Virus record (IMG/VR): IMGVR_UViG_3300034104_005687
Location: 248,001-312,000 of that record
DNA length: 64,000 nucleotides
Reading direction: 5' to 3' (one strand)
The number at the start of each line of letters is the position of its first letter. Positions within the stretch are counted from its first letter, which is position 1. Of this stretch, positions 9,859 through 32,802 are shown in pieces. The notes beneath the pieces are model-generated. The model saw only the letters and a list, made by a program, of their open reading frames with translations, was not told the origin of the DNA and did not search any database. The translations under genes and the position numbers were made by a program.

Positions 9859-9880
9859 ATATAATTTTAAGGAGACTATT

Positions 9881-10084
9881 ATGACTCAAAAGACTTATCG
9901 AACAGCCCAGGGCAAAACAGTTGACATGGGCCGCTTGGTTCTTCAGAACGAACGAACTCGTGCTGTAGGCAACATGAAGGTCAACGCTCGTGGTGATGCC
10001 GTAGACGACATGAATCGTCCCATCAGCAGCAAAACACAACAAGTGAACCGCCAGTACAACAATCAAACCACACCCAAAAAATGA
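9881..10084 (+). CDS. Hypothetical protein (67 aa)
   Basis: AAGGAG RBS; TAAATA late-promoter-like motif upstream. Confidence 0.7.
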   Translation: MTQKTYRTAQGKTVDMGRLVLQNERTRAVGNMKVNARGDAVDDMNRPISSKTQQVNRQYNNQTTPKK

Positions 10085-11959: not shown

Positions 11960-12583
11960 TGCCAGGATCTCAGCAATAGCACGATGAGAACGCACCCCAA
12001 ACGTATATCGGGCGCCTGGAATAGAATAATCTAAATGAAATTTATTGACTATTGAAATTTTGTCAATAACAGACTTTGGTAAGTCATAGTCTTGGTCATC
12101 CCAATACAACAGCATGGTACGGCGATCAGCAGTCAATTCTAAAACCTGATCAAAATAATCCAAGAATCGTTTGCGAGAAAACTTAGAGCAATTATCTGTT
12201 GTAACTATATTGTCTTTGTTGCGATAACGATCAAGATTATTGATTTGAACAATAAAAATATCATCGGTGCTGCGTTGACTCAAAATTTTTAAATTTGCAA
12301 GATGATCGTGGTTTTCATGAAAGTAACAACCAATCCCAAAGTTGTTACAGGGCAAGCCTAATTTCTGAGACAACAGGTATCCAAATGTTTGGTGTTCATC
12401 AAGTCCGATGCCAAACGCAATGCTATTGCCAACAACGTTTATGCTAGTATCGGCACTGTATTTGTTTCTAAAACCTAACTCGTTGAAGCAATAGGTCACT
12501 GTATTGGTTTGATCATATCCAAAACATTTTACTGTTGAATTGGCCAAATTTTTCATGTGTGGCGGGACAAACCATTTTTCCAA
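11933..12583 (-). CDS. SGNH-like hypothetical protein (AT-rich, opposite strand)
   Basis: 'FNELGFR...VVGNSIAFGIGL...TF..LL.......NFGIG' pattern resembles 24463..25320. The start may be 12556. Confidence 0.5.
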   Translation of the reverse strand: MEKWFVPPHMKNLANSTVKCFGYDQTNTVTYCFNELGFRNKYSADTSINVVGNSIAFGIGLDEHQTFGYLLSQKLGLPCNNFGIGCYFHENHDHLANLKILSQRSTDDIFIVQINNLDRYRNKDNIVTTDNCSKFSRKRFLDYFDQVLELTADRRTMLLYWDDQDYDLPKSVIDKISIVNKFHLDYSIPGARYTFGVRSHRAIAEILALLYLRQFN

Positions 12584-13287
12584 TTTAAAATTTCCTTAAG
12601 AATTTGCGTTTTTTTTGCATAGTCAACACTGGGAATAGACACCAGCTCAGTGCAAAAGTCTCTCTGATTTGCTTGTTGATATTGAGCGTATATTGGCTGC
12701 CAAATTTCCCATCTTTTGTGATCAATACTGAGTTGTAGATATTTGAATATAACAGGCAATTTTTGATCCAGCAGCTGGAACAGATCAACATAATTGATCT
12801 TGCACACTGCTGGTATTGTTGCTGGTATTTCATAATATTGCATAAAAGATTTATGACATTCCAACAGAGTTTCTTGTACTAACTGAGCATCGTAATTTTT
12901 ACCAATTGATTCAATTGCAGCAATATAAGGATTTAGAGATTTTGGTATAGTTATCATTGCCCTTGCCATTAAGATTTTGCTATAATCAGTTGTGTCAAAA
13001 ATAATTTTTTTTCCTGGGAGAGTCAATAAGTATTCGAAGTCGTCCTGACTTCCCGGAACAGCATAGATTATACTGTGCTCTGTTGCGTGATCAAAACGTA
13101 TTTTTAAATCTTGTATGCGTAAATGATCTTTGATATAGCTGTGTGCAACAGATCCCATCAATGGATTTGTTCTGATTTTGTGTTTGACTCCATCCAGCGT
13201 TTGATAAAAAGTATCGCCGCGAAGAAATGAAATAGACCAATTCAAAAATGTAAACCCGCACCCACCAGGACCAATTGTTAACAACAT
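12553..13287 (-). CDS. Hypothetical protein, possible P-loop/sulfotransferase-fold
   Basis: 244 aa; N-terminal 'GPGGCGFTFL' loop; AT-rich. Confidence 0.45.
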   Translation of the reverse strand: MLLTIGPGGCGFTFLNWSISFLRGDTFYQTLDGVKHKIRTNPLMGSVAHSYIKDHLRIQDLKIRFDHATEHSIIYAVPGSQDDFEYLLTLPGKKIIFDTTDYSKILMARAMITIPKSLNPYIAAIESIGKNYDAQLVQETLLECHKSFMQYYEIPATIPAVCKINYVDLFQLLDQKLPVIFKYLQLSIDHKRWEIWQPIYAQYQQANQRDFCTELVSIPSVDYAKKTQILKEILNWKNGLSRHT

Positions 13288-13296
13288 AAAGAAACT

Positions 13297-13590
13297 ATGA
13301 GATATCTACTACTTACCTATGTAACCAGACCCAATGGGAAAATTGACGAACAAATGGAGATTAGCCGTCGTGTAAAACAGCGAGATCTTCAAATGTCCAA
13401 TGTAATTCTTGACTTTAAAGAGTTAAAGGTAGTGAAGTGTAGCATGAGCGGCACTGTGATTCCCAGGGATTGGGACCGAATTGTCAGCTACTACCATCAA
13501 CACTATGCATCGACTATAGAACGATTGCTGAAAGAAAACGGCTACGAAATTGTAAAACCTGATCAACAACCGGCAGAAGAATCCAAATGA
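13297..13590 (+). CDS. Hypothetical protein (97 aa)
   Basis: ORF coupled to the next gene. Confidence 0.65.
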   Translation: MRYLLLTYVTRPNGKIDEQMEISRRVKQRDLQMSNVILDFKELKVVKCSMSGTVIPRDWDRIVSYYHQHYASTIERLLKENGYEIVKPDQQPAEESK

Positions 13591-14177
13591 AAGATAGAGT
13601 AATTTTGGTAGATGCAGACGGTGTACTTCTTAACTGGGAATACGCTTTTGCAATCTGGATGGAACAACACGGATTTAAAACAGTGCCCGGCAGTCAATTC
13701 GACTACAGCATGGGCACACGGTATGCAATTGATGCCGATCAATCCAAGCGATTGATCAAGATGTTCAACGAATCAGCTGCTATTGGATTTTTGCCTGCAC
13801 TCAGAGATGCAGTATACTATGTCAAACGTCTGCACGAAGAACACGGATTTGTGTTTCACTGCATTACCAGTTTGAGCTTGGATCCCAATGCAGGCAAGCT
13901 GCGCGAAATGAATCTAAACAAACTGTTTGGATCAACTGCATTTGAACGTGTGGTGTGTTTGGACACTGGTGCTGACAAAAATGCAGCTCTTGAACCATAT
14001 CGTGATTCGGGACTTTGGTGGGTAGAAGACAAGCCTGAAAATGCCGATGTTGGCCACAACATGGGATTGAAAAGTATACTAATGGAACACGGGCACAACA
14101 TGAAACATGAGTGCCCGTATCCTGTGGTCAAAAATTGGCGAGAAATTTACTCAATAATTGCTCCTCAATCTGAATAA
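13587..14177 (+). CDS. HAD-superfamily phosphatase / 5'(3')-nucleotidase-like (T4 gp30.2-like)
   Basis: Motif I 'LVDADGVLLNW', 'ITS' and motif IV 'WVEDKPEN'. Confidence 0.8.
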   Translation: MKDRVILVDADGVLLNWEYAFAIWMEQHGFKTVPGSQFDYSMGTRYAIDADQSKRLIKMFNESAAIGFLPALRDAVYYVKRLHEEHGFVFHCITSLSLDPNAGKLREMNLNKLFGSTAFERVVCLDTGADKNAALEPYRDSGLWWVEDKPENADVGHNMGLKSILMEHGHNMKHECPYPVVKNWREIYSIIAPQSE

Positions 14178-18693: not shown

Positions 18694-19269
18694 ATGGACA
18701 AAGAGATTTTCAAGAACCACGAAGACTACTGGCAAGTAGCAGACAACATTCGCGACATCTACATGAGCGACGGCAGTCTCACTACCTTGCTGGATTTTGA
18801 GCGTGTGTTGGACGAAATGGACATGTATGCTTTCAAAAACTGGGCCATAGGAGAACTGATTCAGGGTCCTGTGATCTCAAAATACCGAGTGGCCTGCACG
18901 TTTATGTGGCCCTACAAGCTAATGCCGGACCCGCGTGCAGCACGCAGATTGCTGCCGTTTGACTGCGAAGTCAACTACAAAAAGCAAAAGATCAAGATAC
19001 CAATTCGCATCACTGACCCCAGCGATTATCGCCCGGGCACAGCCAAAGCACGACTCATTGAAAAACCTGTGTGGCTGGTAGAAATTGTGATGCCCAAGGC
19101 TCTCATGAGCGACATTCGTACAGGCAGCATTGAAATGGAAGACCAGGACATTGACCTGGAAGATCTAGATTCAGCCTACGAGGAAGATCTAGACAAAGAA
19201 GAATATCAAAACGACAATCAGGCGCAAGATGCACAGCAACAACTCAACCAACCCGCACCCGCTGTTTGA
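18694..19269 (+). CDS. Hypothetical protein (191 aa, acidic tail)
   Basis: CATAAATA motif 13 nt upstream; clean ORF. Confidence 0.7.
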   Translation: MDKEIFKNHEDYWQVADNIRDIYMSDGSLTTLLDFERVLDEMDMYAFKNWAIGELIQGPVISKYRVACTFMWPYKLMPDPRAARRLLPFDCEVNYKKQKIKIPIRITDPSDYRPGTAKARLIEKPVWLVEIVMPKALMSDIRTGSIEMEDQDIDLEDLDSAYEEDLDKEEYQNDNQAQDAQQQLNQPAPAV

Positions 19270-19786
19270 AGGCCTTGAATACAAGGATCTAGACGGCATC
19301 ATGAAGTCCACTGTTCATGTGGACGAGTTTGCCTCCAAAATGGGCGACGACGCTGACATCATTGTGCTGAGCTTTTTTGTACGCGACAAAGCTGCTGCTC
19401 GTGATCTAATGTCGTGGTTTGAAAAAGGCTATGAATTTGTGTTGGACGCAGACGTAAGCCCTGGAGAAATCAAACCTGGACGCTACTTGGTATATTTGGA
19501 AATACGTCGTCGCAGTGCTGCAGGACGCCATATTCAGTCATTGCTGGATGATCTGTCTACCTTGACTGAGTTTGAGCCCAAGGACTGGAGATTCACCTAC
19601 GATGATCAACAGTATGATTGGAGCGAAGACAAGTTTGAGCAGGTAGTGCCCTTAACTCCTGATGCATATCGTCGTGAACACGAATCTGAACTCAACGAGT
19701 GGCGCACTGCTGCAGGCTTGCCCGCTAAACGAATTCACGAAGTCAAACCCGACATACGTAGTTTACAGAACGCTGCTGGAATTTAA
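19229..19786 (+). CDS. Hypothetical protein (185 aa)
   Basis: Overlaps the previous ORF; clean reading frame. Confidence 0.7.
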   Translation: MHSNNSTNPHPLFEGLEYKDLDGIMKSTVHVDEFASKMGDDADIIVLSFFVRDKAAARDLMSWFEKGYEFVLDADVSPGEIKPGRYLVYLEIRRRSAAGRHIQSLLDDLSTLTEFEPKDWRFTYDDQQYDWSEDKFEQVVPLTPDAYRREHESELNEWRTAAGLPAKRIHEVKPDIRSLQNAAGI

Positions 19787-19816: not shown

Positions 19817-20470
19817 ATGATAGTAAAAAGTTTCGGTTGCAGCTTTGTATGGGGGTCTGAACTATCAGATATCAACCTTAAAAATAAAAAGTTCAGTTCA
19901 TTGACATGGCCTGCTCTGATTGCAAACAAAAAACAAGCCCAATATCAGTGTCACGCTCGCCCTGGTGCTGGAAATTTCTTTATATTACAAAGTCTGCTGA
20001 ATCAGTTACAAGATCCCGACGATCTATACATTGTGAACTGGACGTTTCACGGACGGTATGATTATGTGTTTGCACACGGTGAAAAAACTACAACATCGTG
20101 GCATTCAATCACACCTTGGGACATGCACGATCGTGCAAAATTTTATTATCAAAATTTTCACAGCGAACTTGTTGACAAGTTGCAAAATTTGATCTGGATA
20201 TCGTCAGCTGTTGCAGCGTTGACTGAGGTCAATGCAAAATTTTGCATGACCTATATGGACAACTTGTTGTTTGACAGTCGATGGAACTGTACTCCGGCAA
20301 TGATCAAATTACAAGAAACGGTTAGACCTCATCTACATCAATTTGAAGGACAGAACTTTGTTGATTGGAGTCAAAAGAATCAATATCCCATAGGATCTGT
20401 GGGCAATCATCCCTTGGAGCAAGCACATGCAGCAGCGGCTGAATACCTGATAAATCAACGTTTGGTATAA
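19817..20470 (+). CDS. SGNH-hydrolase-like protein
   Basis: 'FGCSFVWG...TWPALIA...ARPGAGN' plus C-terminal 'HP..AH'. Confidence 0.55.
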   Translation: MIVKSFGCSFVWGSELSDINLKNKKFSSLTWPALIANKKQAQYQCHARPGAGNFFILQSLLNQLQDPDDLYIVNWTFHGRYDYVFAHGEKTTTSWHSITPWDMHDRAKFYYQNFHSELVDKLQNLIWISSAVAALTEVNAKFCMTYMDNLLFDSRWNCTPAMIKLQETVRPHLHQFEGQNFVDWSQKNQYPIGSVGNHPLEQAHAAAAEYLINQRLV

Positions 20471-21189
20471 ACAAAATACAACCTACCTAGTTCGGTAGGT
20501 TCTTTTTTGAACGTATCTAAAGTCAAGTTGTAGCGTTCAGCAAACTGATTTACAATTTCAAATGTCCAAGGAAAAATATCCACATAGGGACCAGTCTTGT
20601 GCGGGATACCTGGATTGGCTCGCAAAAAGAATTTACCACCAGGCTTCAACAAGTTCACACAGTGTGCAAATCTTTCTTCAATTTCATCTTGTGAGTTAAA
20701 GTTGATACTGCCCAGTGCAATAATCACATCATGTGATTCTGGCTTTACTTTGTAGTCTAGAATATCTACTTCATAATCAGCTGCATCATTGTAAGGATCA
20801 ATACCAACAATATTGTGTATGCGATCTTTAAACGGGTGATAGCCACAGCCCACATCCAGAACTTTTTCAGGATTTAGTTTGTTTACTTCTTCCACTAGTG
20901 CCCATCCTGAGTGATCATATTCACCAGTTCTGGGACGCCAGATTTCACTGAAGAAACGATGTGTGTAACGCTCGCTTAGATCTGCTACAATTTCTTTTAT
21001 TGTGCCACGATATTCACATGGCAAAAACAACTCAGCATCCACAGCATCTTTGAATTTGCTGTAGCGAGCCGGCGTCCACGGCAGTGATTGCACGTTGGTA
21101 TCAGCATCAAAAGAAATATTTGCATACTTGGGTAAATTAAATGCAAGTTGCAAATTTTTTGTAATTAGGTTAAAAATTTTGGTGTTCAT
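20455..21189 (-). CDS. Class I SAM-dependent methyltransferase with a small N-terminal extra domain
   Basis: 'VLDVGCG', 'GIDP' and 'LLKPGG' motifs. Confidence 0.8.
   Translation of the reverse strand: MNTKIFNLITKNLQLAFNLPKYANISFDADTNVQSLPWTPARYSKFKDAVDAELFLPCEYRGTIKEIVADLSERYTHRFFSEIWRPRTGEYDHSGWALVEEVNKLNPEKVLDVGCGYHPFKDRIHNIVGIDPYNDAADYEVDILDYKVKPESHDVIIALGSINFNSQDEIEERFAHCVNLLKPGGKFFLRANPGIPHKTGPYVDIFPWTFEIVNQFAERYNLTLDTFKKEPTELGRLYFVYTKR
20480..20508 (+). terminator. Rho-independent terminator
   Basis: AACCTACC-tagttc-GGTAGGTT hairpin followed by CTTTTTT, just after the stop at 20470. Confidence 0.65.
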
Positions 21190-21243
21190 AGGAAATTTTG
21201 ATATATAAGTTAGATTTTCAATTACTATTTAAGGAGACTTACG

Positions 21244-22203
21244 ATGATCAAGAAATTTCTACTTGCCTTGTTGCTGGTGCCTGCTTTGGCCACTGCTTGG
21301 CAACCCACAAAACCAGTTACTGTGGTATTCCCCAATGGCCCCGGGGCCGGAAACGAAATATCATTTCGTATTGTAGCAGACATTGTGGAACGGAAAACTG
21401 GAGCCAAATTCAATTCTGAATATCGCCCAGGAGCTGACGGCAACATTGCTATCAATCACTTTGTGACAACTCCCCGCGATGGACACACCATTAGTGTGCC
21501 TGCTTGCCAATCAAATTGGGTCACACCTGAAATCTGGTATCCCAACATGATCAAGTACAGCCCAATGGATCTGGAACCCATTGCCAACATTGCTCGCTCA
21601 CCCCTAGCATTTTGGGCACATCCGTCAAGCAAGATCAACACTCCGGAAGAGTTTGTTGCAGCCATTCGTAATAAGCAACGAATGACTGTGGCTATTGGCG
21701 GTGGCGGGCACAAGCTGGCAGTGGAATATCTTGTGGACAAGGTCAGTGTGGCTGGCAGTGATAACTTACAAACTGCTATGTACAAAGGTCCAGCACAGGC
21801 CCTGTTGGATGTCATGGGCGGGCACGTGGAATTTGGCGTAACTCCCGTGGCAGTGGGATATCCTCATGTACAAGCAGGCAAACTCAAGTTCATTGGCATT
21901 GCTGATACACGCCCACTGCCAGGGTTGGAGCACATTCCTTTGATGAGCAAAGCAGCGCCAGGACTCAGCATACACGGCTGTTGGAACATGGTATTGCCAC
22001 CAGGTACACCCCTTGAAATCCAAGCATGGTATCGTGATCAGTTTGTGCCTGCAATTCGCAGTGCAGACGCTGCTGTGAAGTTTCGTGAAAACATGATGTA
22101 CATTACGCCAGAAGAACACAGTGCCGCAGGTGTTAGAGTCAGCATGGCACGTTTGCAGCAGACATGGCAACCCATTGCTCGCAGAATTGATCCCAACAAA
22201 TGA
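21244..22203 (+). CDS. Bug/TctC-family periplasmic solute-binding protein (tripartite tricarboxylate transporter receptor)
   Basis: Signal peptide, 'WQPTKPVTVVFPNGPGAG', 'RPGADGNIA', 'PRDGHT', 'YKGPAQALLDVMGGHV', 'GKLKFIG', 'PPGTP'. AAGGAG RBS. Confidence 0.88.
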   Translation: MIKKFLLALLLVPALATAWQPTKPVTVVFPNGPGAGNEISFRIVADIVERKTGAKFNSEYRPGADGNIAINHFVTTPRDGHTISVPACQSNWVTPEIWYPNMIKYSPMDLEPIANIARSPLAFWAHPSSKINTPEEFVAAIRNKQRMTVAIGGGGHKLAVEYLVDKVSVAGSDNLQTAMYKGPAQALLDVMGGHVEFGVTPVAVGYPHVQAGKLKFIGIADTRPLPGLEHIPLMSKAAPGLSIHGCWNMVLPPGTPLEIQAWYRDQFVPAIRSADAAVKFRENMMYITPEEHSAAGVRVSMARLQQTWQPIARRIDPNK

Positions 22204-22829
22204 AATATATCTTTGTAGCCGGTGCTCCGGGCTCTAAATGGAGCAGCGTGGTCAAAAACATCTATTACTCACCCAGTATCGATCAAAGTGACTACCGAGA
22301 CGAGTGGACCTATTATCACGATGCGTCTGGCCAGCGCGAACTCATGCATTTGGGTGCATACTGGGATCCAGGCATGGCATGCGACCTGCCCGCGGATCTC
22401 ACTACACTTACACAACAACAACTGGAGGAAAAATTCAATGAACCATTCAACCAGGATTCTGCAGGAATCCGAATCATCAAAAGCCATATCTTCTCGTATG
22501 AACAAAATATCAGATACCTGCGTCAGCAGTTCGTAGATTGTGCCATTGTGCTGGTTCATCGCAGCGATGATGCTTGCCTGGGTTGGTGGGTAAAGTGCGG
22601 ACACTTTGACATCACTTACCCCAGTTATGCAGGTTACTATCAAAACTTAAAAAATATGGCCAGCATAATTAAACAGCAAAATACAGGTATACGTCAGGCC
22701 TGGACTCACTACACAGGTTCTGAACCACAGACCAATAGACTGCTGGCTACTGAGCTGGGTATTGAAACGCCACCATTGGAATACATACAAGACTACCACA
22801 TGAGCAACATCAAGGTAAAAGTAATATGA
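22200..22829 (+). CDS. Hypothetical protein, possible P-loop/sulfotransferase-fold
   Basis: 'IFVAGAPGSKWSS', 'IIKSH', 'IVLVHR' pattern. Confidence 0.45.
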   Translation: MKYIFVAGAPGSKWSSVVKNIYYSPSIDQSDYRDEWTYYHDASGQRELMHLGAYWDPGMACDLPADLTTLTQQQLEEKFNEPFNQDSAGIRIIKSHIFSYEQNIRYLRQQFVDCAIVLVHRSDDACLGWWVKCGHFDITYPSYAGYYQNLKNMASIIKQQNTGIRQAWTHYTGSEPQTNRLLATELGIETPPLEYIQDYHMSNIKVKVI

Positions 22830-23476
22830 CACAAAGCAACTGGGAAATAACAAGACAACGCAGTCAATATCATTTTGACAACAGCCGAATGGACCCACGT
22901 TGGGACACTGTACAACAGCTGGGACACATTGCGCCCTGTTGGCATGCGGAATTATCTGAAGCTATCGCAGCATCAACACCAGTGACTTGGCGCACTCGTG
23001 GTCGAGACAACGATCCACTGAAACGTGCATCAGAGGAATACGATCAAGAAGATTATGATCTAGAACAGCAGGGCTATGGTCGAGATCACATTGTTACAGA
23101 CTTGAACTACAACCTGGCACCTGTGTTTCAGCACATTGCTGATCAGTTTGCCTTGGACAAAAGCATGGCTCGCATACACGTACAACGCCCAGGACAGACC
23201 TGGAACCTACACTTAGACAAGCTGGAAAAATGGATGCCAGCAGATCCCAGTCAGGTAGTACGATACTTTGTGCAACTCACAGACTGGCAACCTGGACATT
23301 TTTGGAGTTATGGCAATTACAACTGGTCAGGTTGGCGTGCTGGAGATGTTTCAACTTTTGACTGGGTCAATGTGCCCCATGCAACAGCCAATGCAGGACA
23401 TGTGCCCAGAGCAACACTGCAGATCACCGGAATTAAAACCGCTGCCACAGACACTTTCTTAAATAGTATACTATGA
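22826..23476 (+). CDS. Cupin/2OG-Fe(II) oxygenase-like protein
   Basis: HxD 'LHLD', distal 'PHATANAG' and 'RATLQITG'. Confidence 0.65.
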   Translation: MTQSNWEITRQRSQYHFDNSRMDPRWDTVQQLGHIAPCWHAELSEAIAASTPVTWRTRGRDNDPLKRASEEYDQEDYDLEQQGYGRDHIVTDLNYNLAPVFQHIADQFALDKSMARIHVQRPGQTWNLHLDKLEKWMPADPSQVVRYFVQLTDWQPGHFWSYGNYNWSGWRAGDVSTFDWVNVPHATANAGHVPRATLQITGIKTAATDTFLNSIL

Positions 23477-24270
23477 AACAACCTCAACGTATTCTTATCA
23501 TGGGCCTGCCCGGTGCAGGCAAAACATATCTAGCTCAACAACTAAAGCAACAGCTTGAAAGTCACGGATCTACTGTAGGCTGGCTCAACGCCGACGAAGT
23601 TCGACGTCATTACAACGACTGGGATTTCAGTCGTGAAGGGCGTATACGTCAAAGCCTGCGTATGCGTGATCTTGCTGATGAAAGCAACACAGACTATGTA
23701 ATTGTGGACTTTGTGGCCCCACTGCCCGAAATGCGTCACAACTTCAAAGCTGATTGGTGTATCTGGATGGATACCATTGATGCAGGACGCTACGAAGACA
23801 CCAACAAGATGTTTGTGGAACCTGATGTTTACGATTTCCGTATTACAGAACAGGCAGCAGAAAAATGGTCAGAGTTTGTGGCCGAGCACATCCAGGACAA
23901 TCGTCGCAGACCTGTGTTTGACTGGCAGCGAGAAACAGTTCAAATGCTGGGACGTTGGCAACCATGGCATACAGGCCATCGTGCACTGTTTGAACGTGCT
24001 ATTGCCAAAACAGGGCAAGTTGTGATTCAAATCCGTGACTGCCAAGGCTGGCAAGGGTCAAACCCATTTGCTATAGAACAGGTCAAAAGTTACATACGCA
24101 GAGATCTAGATCCTTTGTATCAGGGACAATACGAAATACAAGTTGTGCCCAATATTGTGAACATTACCTATGGGCGAGATGTTGGTTACAAAATTGAACA
24201 AGAAGTATTTGATGATGCTACTCATTCAATAAGTGCTACTAAAATACGCCGGAGCATGGGGCTTGAATGA
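23473..24270 (+). CDS. cysC: Adenylylsulfate (APS) kinase fused to an HxGH nucleotidyltransferase domain
   Basis: N-terminal 'MGLPGAGKT', 'LNADEVR', 'DFSREGR', 'DFVAP'. C-terminal 'GRWQPWHTGH' and 'ISATKIR'. Confidence 0.8.
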   Translation: MKQPQRILIMGLPGAGKTYLAQQLKQQLESHGSTVGWLNADEVRRHYNDWDFSREGRIRQSLRMRDLADESNTDYVIVDFVAPLPEMRHNFKADWCIWMDTIDAGRYEDTNKMFVEPDVYDFRITEQAAEKWSEFVAEHIQDNRRRPVFDWQRETVQMLGRWQPWHTGHRALFERAIAKTGQVVIQIRDCQGWQGSNPFAIEQVKSYIRRDLDPLYQGQYEIQVVPNIVNITYGRDVGYKIEQEVFDDATHSISATKIRRSMGLE

Positions 24271-24466
24271 TACTACTGCTAGAAGTTTAGTAAAAACCGT
24301 GACATGGAGAGTCACTGGATCGACTGCTACATTTCTGATTGCGTATGCAATGACTGGCAACTTTGCTGTTGCTGGCGTGATAGGGGTGACTCAAATGATA
24401 TCTAACACCATTCTGTACTATATTCACGAGCGGGCATGGAATCGCATTACATGGGGAGTAAAATGA
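24263..24466 (+). CDS. DUF2061-like small membrane protein
   Basis: 'RSLVKTVTWR...YYIHERAW..I.WG'; TTG start after GGAG. Confidence 0.75.
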   Translation: MNDTTARSLVKTVTWRVTGSTATFLIAYAMTGNFAVAGVIGVTQMISNTILYYIHERAWNRITWGVK

Positions 24467-25320
24467 TATTGCCTAGCTTGGTGTTGCCAAGTCGCATAAA
24501 TCAGCACTGGCAATTTTCAGGAATGGATCATATTGACCAGTGCTTTGACAAGAATCATTTTTTGTCATATCCTTACAGTATAACTTACAAGTACAACAGT
24601 CGTGGGTTCCGTGATCAAGAATGGCCCGACACCATGCAAGAATTGCGCAACGCAATATGGTGTATTGGTGACAGCTTCACTGTCGGTCTGGGGTCGCCGC
24701 TGGAACACACCTGGGCATTTCGACTGTCACAGATTGCCAATCGTCGTATCATAAATGTTTCAATGGACGGTGCCAGCAATGAATGGATTGCAAGAACTGC
24801 AAAAAACATTGTTCAAGTTGTTGATCCTGCACAACTTGTAATAATGTGGAGTTACACTCATCGTCGGGAAAGCATCAAAACGTCATTGAGTGATGAATTT
24901 CGAAGAATATATAGCAGTAACTGCACTGACCACGAAGACTGGGAGAATTTCGTAGACTGTAAAAAAAGAGTTGATTTGATTGCAAACTCGGTGCAATTTG
25001 CAGTACCTTGTTTTCGTCATGAACCACCGTTGATTCATCAGAGTTGGTGGGAATCAATACGTGGCACTAACTGGCCAGCAAACCCTCCGACTACACCCCA
25101 AGAATTAAATTCATTGCCAGACTGGATATTGCATGAACTAAAAAATTTGCATGGAAGATTAGACGAATACAGAGATATTGTGACAAGACAACAGTTGTAT
25201 TCTCCACTTCCTGCTACAGTTATACAAGTTGAATCTCAAGATCTTGCTCGAGACGGTCATCATTTTGATTTGATTACAGCTGATTGGGTGGCAACTCAGG
25301 CAACGAGCCGGTTGAATTAA
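24463..25320 (+). CDS. SGNH-hydrolase-like protein
   Basis: 'YNSRGFRD', 'IGDSFTVG', 'NVSMDGASN', C-terminal 'DGHH'. Confidence 0.6.
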   Translation: MILPSLVLPSRINQHWQFSGMDHIDQCFDKNHFLSYPYSITYKYNSRGFRDQEWPDTMQELRNAIWCIGDSFTVGLGSPLEHTWAFRLSQIANRRIINVSMDGASNEWIARTAKNIVQVVDPAQLVIMWSYTHRRESIKTSLSDEFRRIYSSNCTDHEDWENFVDCKKRVDLIANSVQFAVPCFRHEPPLIHQSWWESIRGTNWPANPPTTPQELNSLPDWILHELKNLHGRLDEYRDIVTRQQLYSPLPATVIQVESQDLARDGHHFDLITADWVATQATSRLN

Positions 25321-26518
25321 AGATAGAATTCCAAAATTCTGACTCTGTATGTGTTTTTTCTAACAAGTATTGATCAGTAACTGGTGACGCTGTTTCTGGG
25401 TTGGCCTGAGCCCAGTCGTTGTATATCTCGATCAACTGTTCAAAATTTCTTATTGTTTTTTGTTTTTCAGACAGTGTTTGTTTTTTGATTGGAGGCCCAC
25501 TTATCATTATACCCAACTCAATCATTTGATTTATGGTTTGTTGTGCCTGATCATATCCGTGTTTGAATTGAACCAATGCTTGCTGCTGCGGATGACTCAT
25601 CAGAGACACTACTCCTTCGTGACGTATTAGATTTTGTGCCCATTGCTGCTGTAACTCCGTTGGTAAATTAGCAATATCCTCTACAGAGTGCACTGCCGGC
25701 CAATGCTCAGGAGCGTGCTGTTGGTAATGTTTTACAACGTCAGTTTGTTCCAGTAGTAATTTGTTCAAATCGCTGGGTTTTTCCAGGGGCAAATGATTTA
25801 GATCGCTGCGAGCATAGTGCATCTTGTTCCAGTCATTGAAACTTATGCCAAAATTCTGATTCCATGTTACGCGATTAGATTGAGAGGAAAACACCGGTAG
25901 GTCAAGTATGTATTGTTCTAGTCTAGGAATATCTTTTTCGTAGTTGAAATACGAAGCAATGTCAAAATGTTGCTCGCTCCAGTCAACATACAGTTTGTAT
26001 GCATCCAACTGTCGCTCAAATACCACAGGATCCAGAGTCACTCCCGATTTGTATATTTCGTAAAATGCGTTGATTTTTTCATAGGCAGTGTATACATTTA
26101 GTTTTTTGGTAATTGTGTTCAATGTCATGCTGAGAGCGTGCTCAAACACATTGGCACGCCTACAAGCAATCACATAAAAGTTTTCATTGAGATAGTGATA
26201 AAAAGGAACTTGTTGTTCCATGGTGTCACCACGTCGACGAATATGATAATGTGCCAAGCGTGACGTTTTGTAGTGATCTACACCGTCCAACAACTCTGTT
26301 ACTTGTTGCAGTGTTTGATGATATCCCCAGTCTTTTACTGTTTTTTTGCTGACAATTTCTCGACCAAATTCAGGGCTGTAGTACTTGGCCAGTCCGTTGG
26401 TGAGTTCGTGCATGTTGATAACAGGGCGACCAAAGTCATGAAACTGCATGTAAATGGTCAGCATGCGTTGCAACAAGGTGCTGCCCACAGCATCAGGAGT
26501 GAGAATTAGAACGTTCAT
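25274..26518 (-). CDS. Sulfotransferase-like protein
   Basis: 5'-PSB-like 'TPDAVGSTLL' and 3'-PB-like 'RRANVFEHALS', as in Stf0-type sulfotransferases. Confidence 0.55.
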   Translation of the reverse strand: MNVLILTPDAVGSTLLQRMLTIYMQFHDFGRPVINMHELTNGLAKYYSPEFGREIVSKKTVKDWGYHQTLQQVTELLDGVDHYKTSRLAHYHIRRRGDTMEQQVPFYHYLNENFYVIACRRANVFEHALSMTLNTITKKLNVYTAYEKINAFYEIYKSGVTLDPVVFERQLDAYKLYVDWSEQHFDIASYFNYEKDIPRLEQYILDLPVFSSQSNRVTWNQNFGISFNDWNKMHYARSDLNHLPLEKPSDLNKLLLEQTDVVKHYQQHAPEHWPAVHSVEDIANLPTELQQQWAQNLIRHEGVVSLMSHPQQQALVQFKHGYDQAQQTINQMIELGIMISGPPIKKQTLSEKQKTIRNFEQLIEIYNDWAQANPETASPVTDQYLLEKTHTESEFWNSIFNSTGSLPELPPNQL

Positions 26519-26545: not shown

Positions 26546-27034
26546 ATGTGGATATTACAACTTCTTCCTGACGCAGTTATTCTTTGGTTCTGTAACATCC
26601 TGTTGTTGGTTGGCGTTGTGCTGACTGTAGCAGGGTTTTTCATTCATAGATTACCTTTCTTGTATCAATATCAGTTGCCCTTCAAAGTCATAGGCATTGC
26701 ACTGTTGACCCTGGGCGTGTACTTTCGCGGAGGCTATGCTGTAGAACACGAGTGGCGTCAACGTGTGGCAGAACTAGAAGCACAACTCAAAGTAGCACAA
26801 CAACAAAGTGCTCAAGTCAACACTGTGATTCAAGACCGTGTGATCACAAAAACACAAGTTATCAAAGAAAAAGCCGACACTCTGGTGCAGTTTGTGGATC
26901 GTGAAATTTTCAAAGATCGTGAAGTTGTACGAGAAGTAAACAACTGTCCTGTACCGCAAGAAGCCATTGATGTGCACAACGAAGCTGCACGAATGAATCG
27001 AGTGATTGAACAGCAAAGAAAGAGCACAAAATGA
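26546..27034 (+). CDS. Rz-like inner-membrane spanin
   Basis: N-terminal TM helices, coiled coil and a C-terminal Cys; adjacent to a lipoprotein gene. Confidence 0.7.
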   Translation: MWILQLLPDAVILWFCNILLLVGVVLTVAGFFIHRLPFLYQYQLPFKVIGIALLTLGVYFRGGYAVEHEWRQRVAELEAQLKVAQQQSAQVNTVIQDRVITKTQVIKEKADTLVQFVDREIFKDREVVREVNNCPVPQEAIDVHNEAARMNRVIEQQRKSTK

Positions 27035-27297
27035 AATTGTTGGTTCTAACTGCTGCGTTGGCGCTGTCAGCATGCTCCACTCCTGTGCCAGTGAAACAAC
27101 CATTTCCTGTGGCTCCTGCTGCACTGCTGGAACGCTGTCCTGACTTGCTGGTCATTGATGACGGCAAAAACAGCATGCGAGACATGCTGAAAGTTGTGAT
27201 ACAAAACTATGCACTGTATTATCAGTGTGCAGAAAAGACTCACGGCTGGCAAGACTGGTACGGTGAGCAAAAAAGAATACATGAGAGCGTGCGATGA
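27031..27297 (+). CDS. Rz1-like outer-membrane lipoprotein spanin
   Basis: Lipobox 'LSAC', Pro-rich segment and two further Cys. Confidence 0.75.
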   Translation: MKLLVLTAALALSACSTPVPVKQPFPVAPAALLERCPDLLVIDDGKNSMRDMLKVVIQNYALYYQCAEKTHGWQDWYGEQKRIHESVR

Positions 27298-27641
27298 GAT
27301 ACAGAGAAATACTGGAATCTTGTTGGAAGGGCTATCAGCGTGTGCCAGGCACAGCTGAATACTCACCAGGCAGTTGTGAAAAGATCAGTGAAACAGATCT
27401 TGAAGAAGACCTGCGTAAATGGTTCAAACAAAAGTGGGTGAGATTTGGACCTGACGGCAAGATCCGTGGAGACTGTGCTAGAGGTTCAGAAAAGGAAGGC
27501 AAACCCAAGTGTTTGCCACAGGCCAAGGCACATGCCCTGGGCAAGAAGGGTCGTGCGTCAGCAGCGGCTCGCAAACGTCGTCAAGACCCTGACGCCAATC
27601 GCAGAGGAGCGGCCATCAACGTGGCCACAAAGAAAAAATGA
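27294..27641 (+). CDS. Basic hypothetical protein, putative internal head protein
   Basis: 'MRYREILE' leader followed by two Cys-containing modules, the second Lys/Arg-rich. Confidence 0.55.
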   Translation: MRYREILESCWKGYQRVPGTAEYSPGSCEKISETDLEEDLRKWFKQKWVRFGPDGKIRGDCARGSEKEGKPKCLPQAKAHALGKKGRASAAARKRRQDPDANRRGAAINVATKKK

Positions 27642-28648
27642 AAATCAATCAATTTGTAAACGAATCCCACATGACCTGTCCCGAGTGCGGCGGCCCTGCT
27701 TTCAGTGATCTGCTGTTGGCAGAAAAGAAAGACGCTTGCTATCACAAGGTCAAAGCAAGTGCCAAGGTATGGCCGTCAGCGTATGCGTCTGGACGACTGG
27801 TGCAGTGCCGCAAAAAAGGTGCTGCCAACTATGGCAACAAATCTGAAGGTGTGGCCGAAGATGCTGTGGCAGACTTTGTGGCTCGCGGCGGCCAGATACA
27901 AAAAGGAAAACTACACAAACCACGTAAGGGTGAAACTTGGCAAGGATCATCACATATTGGCGCAGCGGGTGGACAAGGTACAAAAGGTACAGTGTCAGGT
28001 CGAGCTGCAAACACCAACCCAAAGGGTGGTAAACCAGTGGTCAGTGCCGAAGGTTACAATCCTGAATACGATGACGAAGCAGGCATGGCTGACAACAATC
28101 TCGAAACGCTAGAACGTGCAGTCAAAGGCATTGATGACCTAATTCAAGCCGGTGACAACTTGCCAGAATGGTGCCAAGAAAAGATTGCTGTGGCAAAAAG
28201 CATGTTGGTAAGTGTATGGGACTACATGTATTCAGAAGAAGCCAGTGACGAAGTAGATCCTGAAGTCGATGAGATGTTTGAAGCCATGGATCAGTTAGCA
28301 GAAGAGCTGGCTGCCAAGCACAAGGTCAATGTAGACACTGTGTGGGAAAGTTTTGAACAGCTGGATGATCGCATTCTGTACGAAACTGCTGCATGGCGAC
28401 GCAAAGAAGGCAAAAGCAAAACAGGCGGACTCAATGCCAAGGGTGTGGCCAGCTATCGTCGTGAGAACCCAGGATCAAAACTGCAAACTGCTGTGACCAC
28501 AAAGCCAAGCAAACTGAAGCCTGGATCAAAGGCTGCCAAACGCAGAAAGAGCTTCTGCGCCAGAATGTCGGGCGTAAAAGGCCCAATGAAAAAGCCCAAC
28601 GGCAAACCAACTCGCAAAGCACTAGCACTGCGCAAGTGGAACTGCTGA
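27638..28648 (+). CDS. Modular basic/acidic hypothetical protein, putative internal head protein
   Basis: 'MKINQFVNE' leader; modules separated by LAE/VAE/SAE/LYE motifs. Confidence 0.55.
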   Translation: MKINQFVNESHMTCPECGGPAFSDLLLAEKKDACYHKVKASAKVWPSAYASGRLVQCRKKGAANYGNKSEGVAEDAVADFVARGGQIQKGKLHKPRKGETWQGSSHIGAAGGQGTKGTVSGRAANTNPKGGKPVVSAEGYNPEYDDEAGMADNNLETLERAVKGIDDLIQAGDNLPEWCQEKIAVAKSMLVSVWDYMYSEEASDEVDPEVDEMFEAMDQLAEELAAKHKVNVDTVWESFEQLDDRILYETAAWRRKEGKSKTGGLNAKGVASYRRENPGSKLQTAVTTKPSKLKPGSKAAKRRKSFCARMSGVKGPMKKPNGKPTRKALALRKWNC

Positions 28649-28667
28649 CCATACAAGGAGCCAAGTT

Positions 28668-29285
28668 ATGAGCATACTCACACTACAGCAACTACGACAA
28701 CTGGTACCAAGTGCACCCCACATCGAAGATTGGCACGAAGCCCTGGACCAGCTGCTGGACGACTACGGAATCAACACACCACAACGTGTGGCACACTTCA
28801 TAGCACAATGCGCCCATGAATCAGGAAATTTTAGATTTATTCGTGAGAACTTGAACTACAGTGCCAAAGGCCTGATGAGCACGTTTAAAAAGTATTTCCC
28901 CACAGAAGCACTGGCCACACAGTATCAACGTCAACCTGAACGCATTGCCAATCGAGTGTATGCTAGCCGTATGGGCAATGGCGACGAAGCTTCCGGAGAC
29001 GGATGGCGTTATTGCGGTCGCGGCCTGATCCAACTCACAGGCAAAGACAACTACACATTCTTTGCCGGTAGTCTTGGAATCCCTGTGGAAGAAGCTGCTG
29101 AATACTTGGCCACGTTTGAAGGTGCTGCACAAAGTGCCTGTTTTTTCTGGGAACAAAACAATCTCAATCGTTTTGCTGATGCCAACGACGTCAAAGGTCT
29201 GACTCGTGCCATCAACGGTGGACAGATCGGCCTAGAAGACCGTATCAAACACACCAACCATGCCTTGCATGTCATGGGAGTTTAA
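28668..29285 (+). CDS. Endolysin, glycoside hydrolase family 19
   Basis: 'AHFIAQCAHESG', 'ENLNYS', 'GRGLIQLTGKDNY', 'TRAINGG..GLEDR'. AAGGAG RBS. Confidence 0.92.
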   Translation: MSILTLQQLRQLVPSAPHIEDWHEALDQLLDDYGINTPQRVAHFIAQCAHESGNFRFIRENLNYSAKGLMSTFKKYFPTEALATQYQRQPERIANRVYASRMGNGDEASGDGWRYCGRGLIQLTGKDNYTFFAGSLGIPVEEAAEYLATFEGAAQSACFFWEQNNLNRFADANDVKGLTRAINGGQIGLEDRIKHTNHALHVMGV

Positions 29286-31980: not shown

Positions 31981-32757
31981 ATGACAGATCACTACGCCAC
32001 ATTGGGTGTTTCCAAAACTGCCACCGCTGACGAGATCAAACGAGCATTTCGCAAGCTGGCCAGTCAGCACCACCCTGACAAAGGTGGCGATACCGCAGCA
32101 TTTCAAAAAATACAGGCTGCATATGACACACTGGGCGACGCAGCCAAACGAGCTGCCTACGACAACCCCCCAGCACAACACAACTTTTCAAACTTTGGCG
32201 GTGCACAGTTCAATGACATATTTGGTCAGATGTTTGGCGGCGGTGGGTTTCCAGGGTTTAATCAAACACGTCGCAATCATGTGCGTGTGACGCTGTGGAT
32301 AACACTGCATGATGTTGCCACCGGAGGTGCCAGAACAGTGAGTCTAGACACAGCACAAGGTGCCAGTGCTGTGGAGATCAACATTCCTGTGGGCATTGAA
32401 GACAACGACAATGTACAGTATGCAGGCATAGGACCTGGTGGCACTGACTTGGTCGTGACCTTCAAGATTCGCCCAGATTCTCAATGGCAGCGTCAGGGTC
32501 AAAATCTCATTCAAGAACAGCGTGTGAATGTGTGGGATTTAATCACTGGCGGGTCTGTTCAAATCACTGACATTTTGAACAACCAATTGCAGATTACCAT
32601 TCCGGTGGGTACACAACCGGGCACTATGTTGCGTGTGCGAGGACGTGGTCTTCCCAACTCGCAAGGGCAAACCGGAGACATGTTTGTGAGAGTACATGCA
32701 GTATTGCCCCCCAAAATTGCTCCAGAAATACTGGAAGCAATCCAAAAGTATCGCTAA
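31981..32757 (+). CDS. dnaJ: DnaJ/CbpA-type co-chaperone (J domain + G/F region + C-terminal domain, no Zn finger)
   Basis: 'DHYATLGV', HPD motif, 'AYDTLGD..KR..YD', C-terminal 'GRGLP...GDMFV'. Confidence 0.9.
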   Translation: MTDHYATLGVSKTATADEIKRAFRKLASQHHPDKGGDTAAFQKIQAAYDTLGDAAKRAAYDNPPAQHNFSNFGGAQFNDIFGQMFGGGGFPGFNQTRRNHVRVTLWITLHDVATGGARTVSLDTAQGASAVEINIPVGIEDNDNVQYAGIGPGGTDLVVTFKIRPDSQWQRQGQNLIQEQRVNVWDLITGGSVQITDILNNQLQITIPVGTQPGTMLRVRGRGLPNSQGQTGDMFVRVHAVLPPKIAPEILEAIQKYR

Positions 32758-32802
32758 TTTATTTGCGATGTGTTACAATAACAGTTAGGTTAACTTTTTA
32801 CT

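What the first reader, a model, noticed from the sequence alone, without database searches (positions are those of the whole stretch)
19817..26518. Phage-encoded sulfation/tailoring gene cluster
Seen: within 6.7 kb lie SGNH-like, methyltransferase, TctC, P-loop/sulfotransferase-like, Fe(II) oxygenase-like, CysC fusion, DUF2061, second SGNH-like and Stf0-like sulfotransferase genes; the five junctions from 21244 to 25320 overlap. Inference: a pathway that sulfates, hydroxylates and methylates a glycan or small molecule, for virion decoration, host-surface remodelling or DNA modification.
Basis: partly seen in the sequence, partly recalled or inferred. Interest (0 to 1): 0.62.

Follow-up and report, generated by a model that had tools for sequence, protein, structure and literature searches.

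The report
Phage sulfation and tailoring gene module
A 349-kb lake-water jumbo phage carries a conserved block of genes that looks built to make activated sulfate and attach it, after oxidation and methylation, to a target that is still unknown; phage sulfotransferases have no known role.

Summary
All five junctions between 21244 and 25320 overlap.

Family calls, by strength:
- Firm: TctC (78 bits), DUF2061 (78 bits), and the APS-kinase-like domain of F (42 bits).
- Good, from folds and orthologues: D is a minimal PAPS-type sulfotransferase. Its seven best fold matches are sulfotransferases (Z 9.0-11.1), and 28 of 43 orthologues touch Sulfotransfer_3. I is an Stf0-like sulfotransferase by Foldseek, VIA, Atlas fold and Atlas features.
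- Motif-level only: E (invariant HxD...H...R, faint Asp_Arg_Hydrox hits in relatives), H (complete SGNH blocks), A (a paralogue of H), and B (marginal SAM methyltransferase).

Conservation splits in two. B|C-D-E is present in 34-37 of 37 non-redundant loci with full flanks. F, G, A, H and I are accessory. I occurs only where F does. The D-E pairing recurs in distant marine contigs. In bacteria, DUF2061 sits beside or is fused to sulfate-activation genes.

So the enzymology of a sulfation and tailoring module is supported. The acceptor and the purpose are not established. Two cautions apply: F homologues occur in phages with no detectable sulfotransferase, and SGNH paralogues are scattered across this genome. 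I rate it a new variant of a known kind, of moderate interest.

The parts
19817..20470 (+). A: 217-aa SGNH-like paralogue of H. It has G-C-S in place of G-D-S. Accessory gene.
   Evidence: No Pfam hit. Invariant S9, G50, N53 and H198 in 19 orthologues. hhalign against the H family gives 83%, E 8.7e-6. Present in 15 of 37 full-flank loci, 14 of them with F. Further paralogues lie elsewhere in the genome.
20455..21189 (-). B: 244-aa class I SAM-dependent methyltransferase, transcribed divergently from C. Core gene.
   Evidence: Methyltransf_11 at 22.4 bits (cut-off 21.2) and Methyltransf_25 at 7.7e-5. Present in 37 of 37 full-flank loci at 62-88% identity. A profile search of PDB sequences found nothing.
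21244..22203 (+). C: 319-aa TctC/Bug-type periplasmic solute-binding protein with an N-terminal signal-peptide-like segment and an AAGGAG ribosome-binding site. Core gene.
   Evidence: PF03401 at 9.6e-22, 78 bits. Sequence. Present in 34 of 37 loci. Identity among orthologues spans 34-91%. Some relatives have TctA plus a TctC-like gene at this position instead.
22200..22829 (+). D: 209-aa minimal PAPS-type sulfotransferase-like protein. Core gene.
   Evidence: AF2 pLDDT 90.5. The top seven VIA matches are sulfotransferases: TPST1 Z 11.1 (rmsd 3.5, 162 aligned) down to 3rnl Z 9.0. Kinases score 8.3 or less. 28 of 43 orthologues hit PF13469, best 1.1e-6; the window copy does not. BFVD orthologue auto-named 'Sulfotransferase family', TM 0.92. 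Single copy in the genome.
22826..23476 (+). E: 216-aa putative Fe(II)/2-oxoglutarate-type (cupin) oxygenase. Core gene, always next to D.
   Evidence: H129, D131, H185 and R195 are invariant or nearly so in 43 close and 73 distant relatives. 7 of 73 relatives hit PF05118 (best 2e-4) and 4 hit Cupin_2. The nearest named Atlas cluster carries PF05118. tblastn 4e-4 to a cyanophage gene annotated '2OG-Fe(II) oxygenase'. Not folded. No Tet_JBP or 2OG-FeII_Oxy_5 match.
23473..24270 (+). F: 265-aa fusion of an APS-kinase-like P-loop domain (about residues 1-125) and a small HxGH / ISxT nucleotidyltransferase domain (about residues 150-265). Accessory gene.
   Evidence: PF01583 at 9.6e-11, 42.4 bits (cut-off 21.1). 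phrog_10255 'kinase' at 3.4e-48. NCBIfam adenylyl-sulfate kinase and NMN adenylyltransferase hits, both below cut-off. PDB hits to APS kinases at 9e-5 and to the NMNAT 2qjt at 1.3e-3. Motifs invariant in 23 homologues including phage Sano. Present in 21 of 37 loci.
24233..24466 (+). G: DUF2061 small membrane protein. The true start may be the TTG at 24263. Accessory gene, found only with F.
   Evidence: PF09834 at 6.1e-22. Present in 5 of 37 loci, all with F. Of 30 bacterial DUF2061 loci, 4 adjoin APS_kinase, 2 ATP-sulfurylase, 2 PAPS_reduct and 2 GTP_EFTU. One is a DUF2061-APS kinase fusion.
24436..25320 (+). H: SGNH/GDSL-type hydrolase-like protein. The true start is probably the ATG at 24463. 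Accessory gene.
   Evidence: NF047474 at 1.9e-5, 24 bits, far below its cut-off of 300. Invariant G78-D79-S80, G112, N115 and D273-x-x-H276. Present in 7 of 37 loci.
25274..26518 (-). I: 414-aa Stf0-like sulfotransferase with a helical C-terminal extension, convergent with H. Accessory gene, found only where F is present.
   Evidence: AF2 pLDDT 83.6. Foldseek top hit Stf0 1tex, E 9.6e-4, prob 1.00. VIA Z 10.7 to Stf0 (rmsd 4.2, 195 aligned); other sulfotransferases align over 200-217 residues, kinases over only about 150. Atlas fold matches to PF13469/PF09037 clusters at TM 0.64-0.71. Atlas features 0.95 to an Stf0 cluster. No Pfam hit in any of 11 orthologues. Present in 10 of 37 loci, all 10 with F.

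Best explanation
This is an accessory sulfation and tailoring module of an uncultured jumbo phage from lake water.

Shown:
- The phage encodes two proteins with PAPS-type sulfotransferase folds, D and I.
- It encodes a fusion, F, of an APS-kinase-like domain with a small HxGH nucleotidyltransferase.
- It encodes a DUF2061 membrane protein (G), whose bacterial homologues sit beside or are fused to sulfate-activation enzymes.
- It encodes a protein (E) with the HxD...H...R signature of Fe(II)/2-oxoglutarate oxygenases, always next to D.
- It encodes a SAM methyltransferase (B), a secreted TctC-type binding protein (C) and two SGNH-like proteins (A, H).

Inferred mechanism:
- F turns APS into PAPS inside the infected cell. 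The APS comes from the host's ATP sulfurylase or possibly from F's own nucleotidyltransferase half. This frees the phage from the host's PAPS supply.
- E introduces or exposes a hydroxyl group on the acceptor, and D sulfates it.
- I sulfates a second position or a second acceptor.
- B methylates. A and H remove or move acyl groups.
- C captures a carboxylate in the periplasm and hands it to a TctAB permease. The permease is the host's here and phage-encoded in some relatives. The carboxylate may be the acceptor, a precursor, or unrelated.

The most likely acceptor class is a host envelope glycan or lipid. An imported small organic acid is second and a protein tyrosine third. This ranking is a guess, not a result.
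For: - D: sulfotransferase fold ahead of kinases, and Sulfotransfer_3 hits in 28 of 43 orthologues.
- I: four lines of evidence converge on Stf0-type sulfotransferases.
- F: APS_kinase above Pfam's cut-off, with invariant P-loop, N-x-D-x-x-R, W-D-F-S, D-F-V-A-P, HxGH and I-S-x-T motifs.
- G: bacterial DUF2061 loci are enriched for CysC, Sat and CysDN and include a fusion.
- E: conserved metal and 2OG-type residues across 73 diverse relatives.
- Synteny: B, C and E accompany D in 37, 34 and 36 of 37 non-redundant full-flank loci. I is present only with F (10 of 10; Fisher p 0.0017, not corrected for phylogeny).
- D-like genes lie directly upstream of, or within 2 kb of, E homologues of only 23-30% identity in marine contigs. 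An APS-kinase gene accompanies another distant E homologue.
- The phage has no ATP-sulfurylase or PAPS_reduct match, so its kinase is not part of a phage-borne assimilation pathway.
Against: - The window's own D, E and I have no Pfam hit at all.
- The basic residue expected in the 5'-phosphosulfate loop is shifted in D (G-A-P-G-S-K-W) and not conserved in I (A or R at position 10).
- E was never folded.
- F's kinase domain matches only model positions 3-93 of 152 and falls far below NCBIfam's equivalog cut-offs.
- F's C-terminal half resembles NMN adenylyltransferases more than ATP sulfurylase.
- Full-length F homologues exist in phage Sano and its relatives, and a kinase-only homologue in RsoM2USA. 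In Sano and RsoM2USA no D-like, I-like or PF13469 match was found.
- About 16 of 37 relatives keep D-E without F nearby.
- Gene overlap and conserved order are normal in phage genomes and do not prove a pathway.
- No RNA run holds the locus.
- No acceptor is identified.
Confidence: 0.55

Rival explanations
1. Sulfur-assimilation helper. F, with G, is a CysC-type auxiliary metabolic gene that boosts the host's sulfate assimilation in sulfur-poor lake water. The sulfotransferase-like genes are unrelated neighbours.
For: CysC-family and CysH-family genes are reported as common freshwater viral auxiliary genes and are read this way (bioRxiv 10.1101/655167). The phage comes from lake water. F homologues occur without sulfotransferases in Sano-like phages. 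DUF2061 is linked to assimilation genes in bacteria.
Against: The phage has no PAPS reductase or ATP sulfurylase, so PAPS made by F would help only a host that reduces PAPS. I is found only where F is. Two sulfotransferase folds sit in the same 4 kb.
Confidence: 0.15
2. No pathway. This is a syntenic stretch of independent accessory genes in a phage lineage whose gene order is generally conserved.
For: Neighbouring genes of unknown function (18694-19786, 26546-29285) are conserved in order as well. The accessory genes come and go. Relatives insert unrelated genes between the members. SGNH paralogues are dispersed over the genome. Four-base overlaps are common in phages.
Against: The D-E pairing persists in marine contigs where E is only 23-30% identical and the rest of the neighbourhood differs. 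I co-occurs with F and A co-occurs with F. The F-G adjacency mirrors bacterial fusions.
Confidence: 0.15
3. DNA or nucleotide hypermodification. B methylates a base, E oxidises it in the manner of a TET/JBP enzyme, and D and F activate the hydroxyl with sulfate or phosphate for further substitution.
For: The methyltransferase, oxygenase and P-loop-fold enzyme trio resembles known phage base-hypermodification logic (my own knowledge, not tested here). Distant E homologues sit near radical SAM, carbamoyltransferase and FAD enzymes. F homologues in Sano lie in an early-gene region with a MazG-like pyrophosphatase.
Against: No Tet_JBP match anywhere in the genome. B matches small-molecule-type methyltransferase families only. 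C is a secreted periplasmic binding protein. D matches sulfotransferases better than kinases.
Confidence: 0.07
4. NAD-related salvage. F is a NadR-like kinase plus NMN adenylyltransferase, and C imports a pyridine carboxylate. The sulfotransferases are a separate function.
For: F's C-terminal half hits NMN adenylyltransferase models and a solved NMNAT. Foldseek lists nicotinamide riboside kinases and NadR among distant P-loop matches, but for D, not F. Phage NAD salvage is known (my own knowledge).
Against: F's kinase half scores best with APS_kinase (42 bits) and only 17.8 bits with the NadR-type AAA_28 family. The DUF2061 partner points to sulfate activation. The ligand of C is untested.
Confidence: 0.07

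Closest known systems
Rhizobial Nod-factor tailoring set (NodH sulfotransferase with NodPQ PAPS supply, NodS methyltransferase, NodL/NodU acyl and carbamoyl transfer); comparison from my own knowledge
   Same: A dedicated activated-sulfate supply is encoded next to a PAPS-type sulfotransferase, together with a methyltransferase and acyl-handling enzymes. A NodH cluster appears among the Atlas fold neighbours of I.
   Different: Here the genes are in a phage. There is no ATP sulfurylase or CysN-type GTPase. An oxygenase and a TctC binding protein are present. No glycan-backbone synthesis genes were found in the block, and the acceptor is unknown.
Mycobacterial Stf0 (trehalose 2-sulfotransferase, PDB 1tex) and Sulfotransfer_3 enzymes (TPST, Stf1, Stf9, olefin-synthase sulfotransferase domain)
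   Same: These are the best fold matches for I (Z 10.7) and for D (Z 9.0-11.1).
   Different: Sequence identity is 9-16%. The window copies score below every Pfam threshold. The loop lysine or arginine is shifted in D and not conserved in I. D is much smaller (209 aa). I carries an extra helical region of roughly 150-200 residues.
Bifunctional PAPS synthases (ATP sulfurylase plus APS kinase, e.g. PDB 2gks and human PAPSS1)
   Same: An APS-kinase-like domain is fused to an HxxH-type nucleotidyltransferase-fold domain. These are the top PDB sequence matches for the kinase half.
   Different: The domain order is kinase first. The transferase half is only about 115 aa, has no PF01747 match and looks more like NMNAT or cytidylyltransferase. 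The kinase half is truncated relative to the model.
Freshwater and marine phage auxiliary genes annotated CysC, Sulfotransfer_3 or 2OG-Fe(II) oxygenase
   Same: The same families have been noted singly in Lake Biwa viral genomes and in OM43 and cyanophage genomes. A UniProt orthologue of D is already auto-named 'Sulfotransferase family'.
   Different: Those reports list single genes. One states that the role of phage sulfotransferases is unclear (PMC10580990). In the papers I searched I found no description of the conserved TctC-sulfotransferase-oxygenase core with a co-varying PAPS-supply set.

Membership tests
PAPS-dependent sulfotransferase superfamily (D) | Sulfotransferase variant of the P-loop fold | tested here: met
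   The top seven of 48,161 chains are sulfotransferases, Z 11.1-9.0. The best kinase scores 8.3. The margin is about 1-3 Z units, so the separation is moderate.
PAPS-dependent sulfotransferase superfamily (D) | Match to a curated sulfotransferase HMM above its cut-off | tested here: not met
   The window copy has no hit. 28 of 43 orthologues hit PF13469 (best E 1.1e-6); the two orthologues with a bit score on record reach only 20-21 bits against the cut-off of 27.
PAPS-dependent sulfotransferase superfamily (D) | 5'-phosphosulfate loop with a catalytic Lys/Arg, and a 3'-phosphate Arg/Ser pair | tested here: inconclusive
   The loop G8-A-P-G-S-K13-W-S-S and R121 are invariant. The lysine is offset from the canonical position and no matching serine could be placed without a structural alignment.
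Stf0 sulfotransferase family, PF09037 (I) | HMM match | tested here: not met
   No Pfam family for any of 11 orthologues.
Stf0 sulfotransferase family, PF09037 (I) | Fold and learned-feature similarity to Stf0-type enzymes | tested here: met
   Foldseek 1tex E 9.6e-4, prob 1.00. VIA Z 10.7. Atlas fold TM 0.64-0.71 to PF13469/PF09037 clusters. Atlas features 0.95 with 185 shared.
Stf0 sulfotransferase family, PF09037 (I) | Conserved G-S-T loop and R...S motif | tested here: inconclusive
   G12-S13-T14 and R121, N123, E126, S130 are invariant. The basic residue before the loop is A or R among orthologues.
Adenylyl-sulfate kinase, CysC (F, N-terminal half) | PF01583 above the gathering score, with an intact P-loop | tested here: met
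   42.4 bits against a cut-off of 21.1, but only model positions 3-93 of 152. G-L-P-G-x-G-K is invariant.
Adenylyl-sulfate kinase, CysC (F, N-terminal half) | NCBIfam equivalog or subfamily cut-off | tested here: not met
   45 bits against 127 (NF004041) and 32.7 against 138.7 (TIGR00455).
ATP sulfurylase (F, C-terminal half) | PF01747 match | tested here: not met
   No match anywhere in the genome, while the control genomes matched. Only the superfamily motifs HxGH and I-S-x-T are seen. PF01467 scores 19.8 bits, below its cut-off of 21.
Fe(II)/2-oxoglutarate oxygenase, cupin (E) | HxD...H metal triad plus a distal Arg | tested here: met
   H129 is invariant. D131, H185 and R195 are conserved in at least 90% of 73 diverse relatives.
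Fe(II)/2-oxoglutarate oxygenase, cupin (E) | HMM match or double-stranded beta-helix fold | tested here: inconclusive
   The window copy has no hit. 7 of 73 relatives hit PF05118 (best 2e-4). The AtsK alignment is not significant (E 0.5).
TET/JBP DNA base oxygenases (E) | PF12851 match | tested here: not met
   No match at E up to 1 in the whole phage genome.
TctC/Bug solute-binding proteins (C) | PF03401 above cut-off and a secretion signal | tested here: met
   78.2 bits against a cut-off of 27. The hydrophobic N-terminus is seen directly. No signal-peptide predictor was run.
SGNH/GDSL hydrolases (H, A) | Blocks I, II, III and V (Ser, Gly, Asn, His) | tested here: inconclusive
   H has all four blocks invariant, but its HMM score is 24 bits against a cut-off of 300. 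A has G-C-S, G, N and H, and is linked to H only by hhalign at 83%.
DUF2061 (G) | PF09834 above cut-off | tested here: met
   78.2 bits against a cut-off of 23.1.

The most novel reading that the evidence does not exclude
The D-E pair is a widespread hydroxylate-then-sulfate tailoring unit of aquatic phages, with thousands of metagenomic homologues. In this lineage it is fed by a self-sufficient miniature PAPS synthase: F's small HxGH domain would act as an ATP sulfurylase of a new type, working with the DUF2061 membrane partner. The module would remodel a host envelope component or a TctC-imported metabolite during infection. This would give the first function for phage sulfotransferases and for DUF2061.
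Probability: 0.2. Interest if true: 0.7.

Novelty: new variant of a known kind. Interest (0 to 1): 0.5.

Why it matters
Sulfotransferase, CysC and 2OG-oxygenase genes are listed again and again as phage auxiliary genes in lakes and oceans, with no known role. One paper says so outright (PMC10580990).

This locus offers a compact and testable arrangement: a conserved sulfotransferase-oxygenase pair, a co-varying PAPS-supply gene with a second sulfotransferase, and a secreted binding protein that could reveal the substrate.

If the inferred pathway is real, it would be a new way for phages to rewrite host surface or metabolite chemistry. It would also attach a function to DUF2061 and to a very large family of hypothetical phage proteins.

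Tried and rejected
- Sequence-only searches of PDB chains with D, E, I and B, singly or as profiles, gave nothing significant.
- hhalign of the D family against the I family showed no relationship, so they are not recent paralogues.
- E against the 'cysteine dioxygenase' of phage Sano: not significant.
- blastn of the region against GenBank phages: no match. tblastn of I: no match.
- A pattern search for I in IMG/VR returned only a second record of the same sequence (100% identity). Orthologues were then found by tblastn inside loci fetched with D.
- TctC against species genomes gave only a 24% match in a Burkholderiales MAG, so no host call can be made.
- Promoter-like and terminator-like sites were not above shuffled expectation.
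- No RNA run holds the locus.
- The extra conserved genes in relatives (about 208, 232 and 191 aa) had no Pfam hit and no profile link to A-I.
- The apparent kinase-like neighbour 'c4' turned out to be PhoH.

Full report
**Where the window lies.** The window is bases 248001-312000 of a 349,369-bp IMG/VR virus record that CheckV rates 97% complete. Its GC content is 45.7%. Flanking genes include a clamp-loader ATPase, PhoH, DnaJ, ClpB, a weak match to an Rz1-like spanin (LysC) family and a 3-TM holin-family match. Near-identical sequence is held by 24 lake-water metagenome studies, none of them RNA. No cultured phage in GenBank matches at the DNA level.

**The observation.** The junctions C/D, D/E and E/F each overlap by 4 nt. 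F/G overlaps by 38 nt, or by 8 nt if G starts at the TTG at 24263, which fits its 67-aa orthologues. G/H overlaps by 31 nt, or by 4 nt if H starts at the ATG at 24463, which fits the N-terminus of its orthologues. A/B and H/I overlap tail to tail. C has a strong ribosome-binding site, and B and C diverge from a 54-bp AT-rich spacer. Promoter-like and terminator-like sites are no more frequent than in shuffled sequence.

**What each gene is.**
- C is a TctC/Bug solute-binding protein (PF03401, 78 bits) with a hydrophobic N-terminal leader.
- G is DUF2061 (78 bits).
- B is a class I SAM methyltransferase, only just above one Pfam cut-off.
- F has an N-terminal half that passes Pfam's APS_kinase threshold (42 bits, model positions 3-93 of 152). 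Its C-terminal half of about 115 aa has HxGH and I-S-x-T motifs and scores sub-threshold with cytidylyltransferase and NMN adenylyltransferase models. These motifs are invariant in 23 homologues, including the 40%-identical protein of Xylella phage Sano.
- D has no Pfam hit of its own. Its AlphaFold model is confident (pLDDT 90.5). In an exhaustive comparison with 48,161 chains the seven best matches are all sulfotransferases: TPST-1 Z 11.1, tick TPST 10.5, TPST-2 10.3, olefin-synthase sulfotransferase domain 9.8, Stf1 9.3, Stf9 9.0 and 3rnl 9.0. Nucleotide kinases score 8.3 or less. Foldseek alone could not separate these two groups. 28 of 43 orthologues touch Sulfotransfer_3, best E 1.1e-6. 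Some precomputed database relatives carry PF13469. A 57%-identical UniProt phage protein is auto-named 'Sulfotransferase family'.
- I has no Pfam hit in any orthologue, but four lines of evidence agree on its fold. Foldseek's top hit is Stf0 (E 9.6e-4, prob 1.00). VIA gives Z 10.7 to Stf0, with sulfotransferases aligning over 200-217 residues and kinases over only about 150. Atlas fold neighbours carry PF13469/PF09037. Atlas sequence features score 0.95 to an Stf0 cluster.
- E keeps H129, D131, H185 and R195 across 73 relatives that are only 23-53% identical to it. Seven of those touch Asp_Arg_Hydrox and four touch Cupin_2. A cyanophage gene annotated '2OG-Fe(II) oxygenase' matches at 4e-4. 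There is no Tet_JBP signal. E was not folded.
- H has all four SGNH blocks invariant and a weak GDSL model hit.
- A is a paralogue of H (hhalign 83%) with G-C-S in place of G-D-S.

**Is it a unit?** Using D as bait I fetched 80 IMG/VR loci. Many come from 340-375-kb contigs, and two of those records have terminal repeats. I mapped every window gene onto them. Among 37 non-redundant loci with full flanks the counts are: B 37, E 36, C 34, F 21, A 15, I 10, H 7 and G 5. I and G occur only with F, and A occurs with F in 14 of 15 cases. These counts are not corrected for phylogeny. So the conserved core is B|C-D-E, and the rest is a co-varying accessory set.

Relatives insert other genes into the block: a Peptidase_C26/GATase-like gene and conserved unknowns of about 232, 208 and 191 aa. 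In several relatives TctC is replaced by a TctA permease plus a TctC-like gene. Transport therefore appears to belong to the block.

Conserved order alone proves little in a phage lineage. The stronger argument comes from distant E homologues (23-30% identity) in unrelated-looking contigs:
- In two marine contigs a D-like gene lies directly upstream of the E-like gene.
- In another set a D-like gene lies 1.7 kb downstream of an E-like gene that is itself preceded by a methyltransferase.
- In a third, an E-like gene is accompanied by a split F (an APS-kinase gene plus a nucleotidyltransferase-like gene).

**The PAPS-supply reading.** The phage has no ATP sulfurylase and no PAPS-reductase-fold protein, so F is not part of a phage-borne assimilation pathway. 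DUF2061 was the unexplained partner. I sampled 301 genomes of the class that contains a Burkholderiales MAG and found DUF2061 in 32. Of the 30 loci examined, within 1.5 kb of the DUF2061 gene 4 have APS_kinase, 2 ATP-sulfurylase, 2 PAPS_reduct, 2 a CysN-type GTPase and 1 TauE. One gene is a DUF2061-APS kinase fusion, and another is a 521-aa protein ending in DUF2061. The phage's F-G adjacency therefore mirrors a bacterial association with sulfate activation.

**Cautions.**
- The window's own D, E and I sit below every curated threshold.
- The catalytic basic residue of the phosphosulfate loop is displaced in D and not conserved in I.
- Phage Sano has a full-length F homologue and RsoM2USA a kinase-only one. 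Neither shows a D-like, I-like or PF13469 match.
- Nearly half of the relatives keep D-E with no F nearby.
- Paralogues of A and H occur at four to five other places in this genome, so their presence in the block is weak evidence.
- A second E paralogue lies outside the window.
- Nothing identifies the acceptor. D's best neighbours are protein tyrosine sulfotransferases. E's faint affinity is to the aspartyl/LpxO-type hydroxylases. Distant E homologues sit among fatty-acid desaturase-type, radical SAM, halogenase, carbamoyltransferase and sugar aminotransferase genes. These hints point in different directions.

**Comparison with what is known.** The nearest functional analogue I can name, from my own knowledge, is the rhizobial Nod-factor tailoring set: NodH with NodPQ and NodS. 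The nearest structural relatives are Stf0 and the Sulfotransfer_3 enzymes. The nearest architectural analogue of F is a bifunctional PAPS synthase. Single CysC, sulfotransferase and 2OG-oxygenase genes have been listed as aquatic phage auxiliary genes, with CysC read as sulfur assimilation and sulfotransferases left unexplained. In the papers I searched I found no description of this module.

**Verdict.** The nine-gene 'pathway' is better described as a conserved core with a co-varying accessory set. The target and the purpose remain open.

Noticed in passing
L063:1447-2901 and L063:2898-3965 (also L064-L068, L025, L035): Some relatives carry a full TctA permease (PF01970, 2.6e-84) plus a 355-aa TctC-like gene at the position where the window has TctC. 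Part of this phage clade therefore brings its own transporter membrane subunit.
   Followed up: partly
Relatives, e.g. L044:4626-5189, L012:1925-2623, L011:12341-12970, L059:9160-9732: Genes that recur inside the module in relatives but are absent from the window: a Peptidase_C26/GATase-like gene (30 loci) and conserved unknowns of about 232 aa (21 loci), 208 aa (41 loci) and 191 aa (18 loci). The 191-aa family resembles part of the window's 1408-aa protein at 39163-43389.
   Followed up: partly
L119-L121, L122-L123, L124, L126: Distant E-family genes sit in dense tailoring neighbourhoods. These hold four FA_desaturase genes, Asp_Arg_Hydrox, radical SAM, two Trp_halogenase genes, a carbamoyltransferase, a DAO oxidoreductase, a DegT aminotransferase and three tandem E-like genes.
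   Followed up: partly
L114:958-1683 and L115:118-1683 (bacterial genomes): In bacteria DUF2061 is fused to an APS kinase (241 aa) and forms the C-terminus of a 521-aa protein. Sulfate-activation genes are frequent neighbours of DUF2061.
   Followed up: yes
L003:5995-6732 (Xylella phage Sano) and 11 other GenBank phage records: The kinase-nucleotidyltransferase fusion F is conserved at 36-40% identity in Sano-like siphophages of Xylella, Xanthomonas and Stenotrophomonas and in phage DLP6. No detectable sulfotransferase was found in Sano, the one of these checked. In RsoM2USA and phiRSL1 only the kinase half matches.
   Followed up: partly
G000:C1:66903-67646, 122453-123328, 139857-140657; window 48212-49048 and 11936-12595: SGNH-like paralogues of A and H are dispersed over the phage genome, making a multi-copy family of unknown role.
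   Followed up: no
G000:C1:205201-205722 (outside the window): A second E-family oxygenase-like gene (profile E 3e-26). It is also the only place in the genome with a faint Asp_Arg_Hydrox match (19.3 bits).
   Followed up: no
window 31981-35073: The phage encodes its own DnaJ (J domain plus C-terminal domain) and a full-length ClpB-type disaggregase next to each other.
   Followed up: no
window 20480-20501: A perfect 8-bp hairpin with T-rich tracts on both strands lies 10 nt after the stop of A and inside the last codons of B. It could be a bidirectional terminator, but terminator-like sites are not enriched in the region.
   Followed up: no
window 12001-14000: GC content drops to 0.38 against about 0.46 elsewhere, over two minus-strand ORFs with no family match.
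   Followed up: no
L086:11182-12039, L087:8538-9329 and 9320-10099 (Marine virus AG-345-D19): A marine single-cell-derived virus carries three D-like sulfotransferase paralogues, two of them in tandem, with no E-like or F-like gene in the stretches examined.
   Followed up: partly
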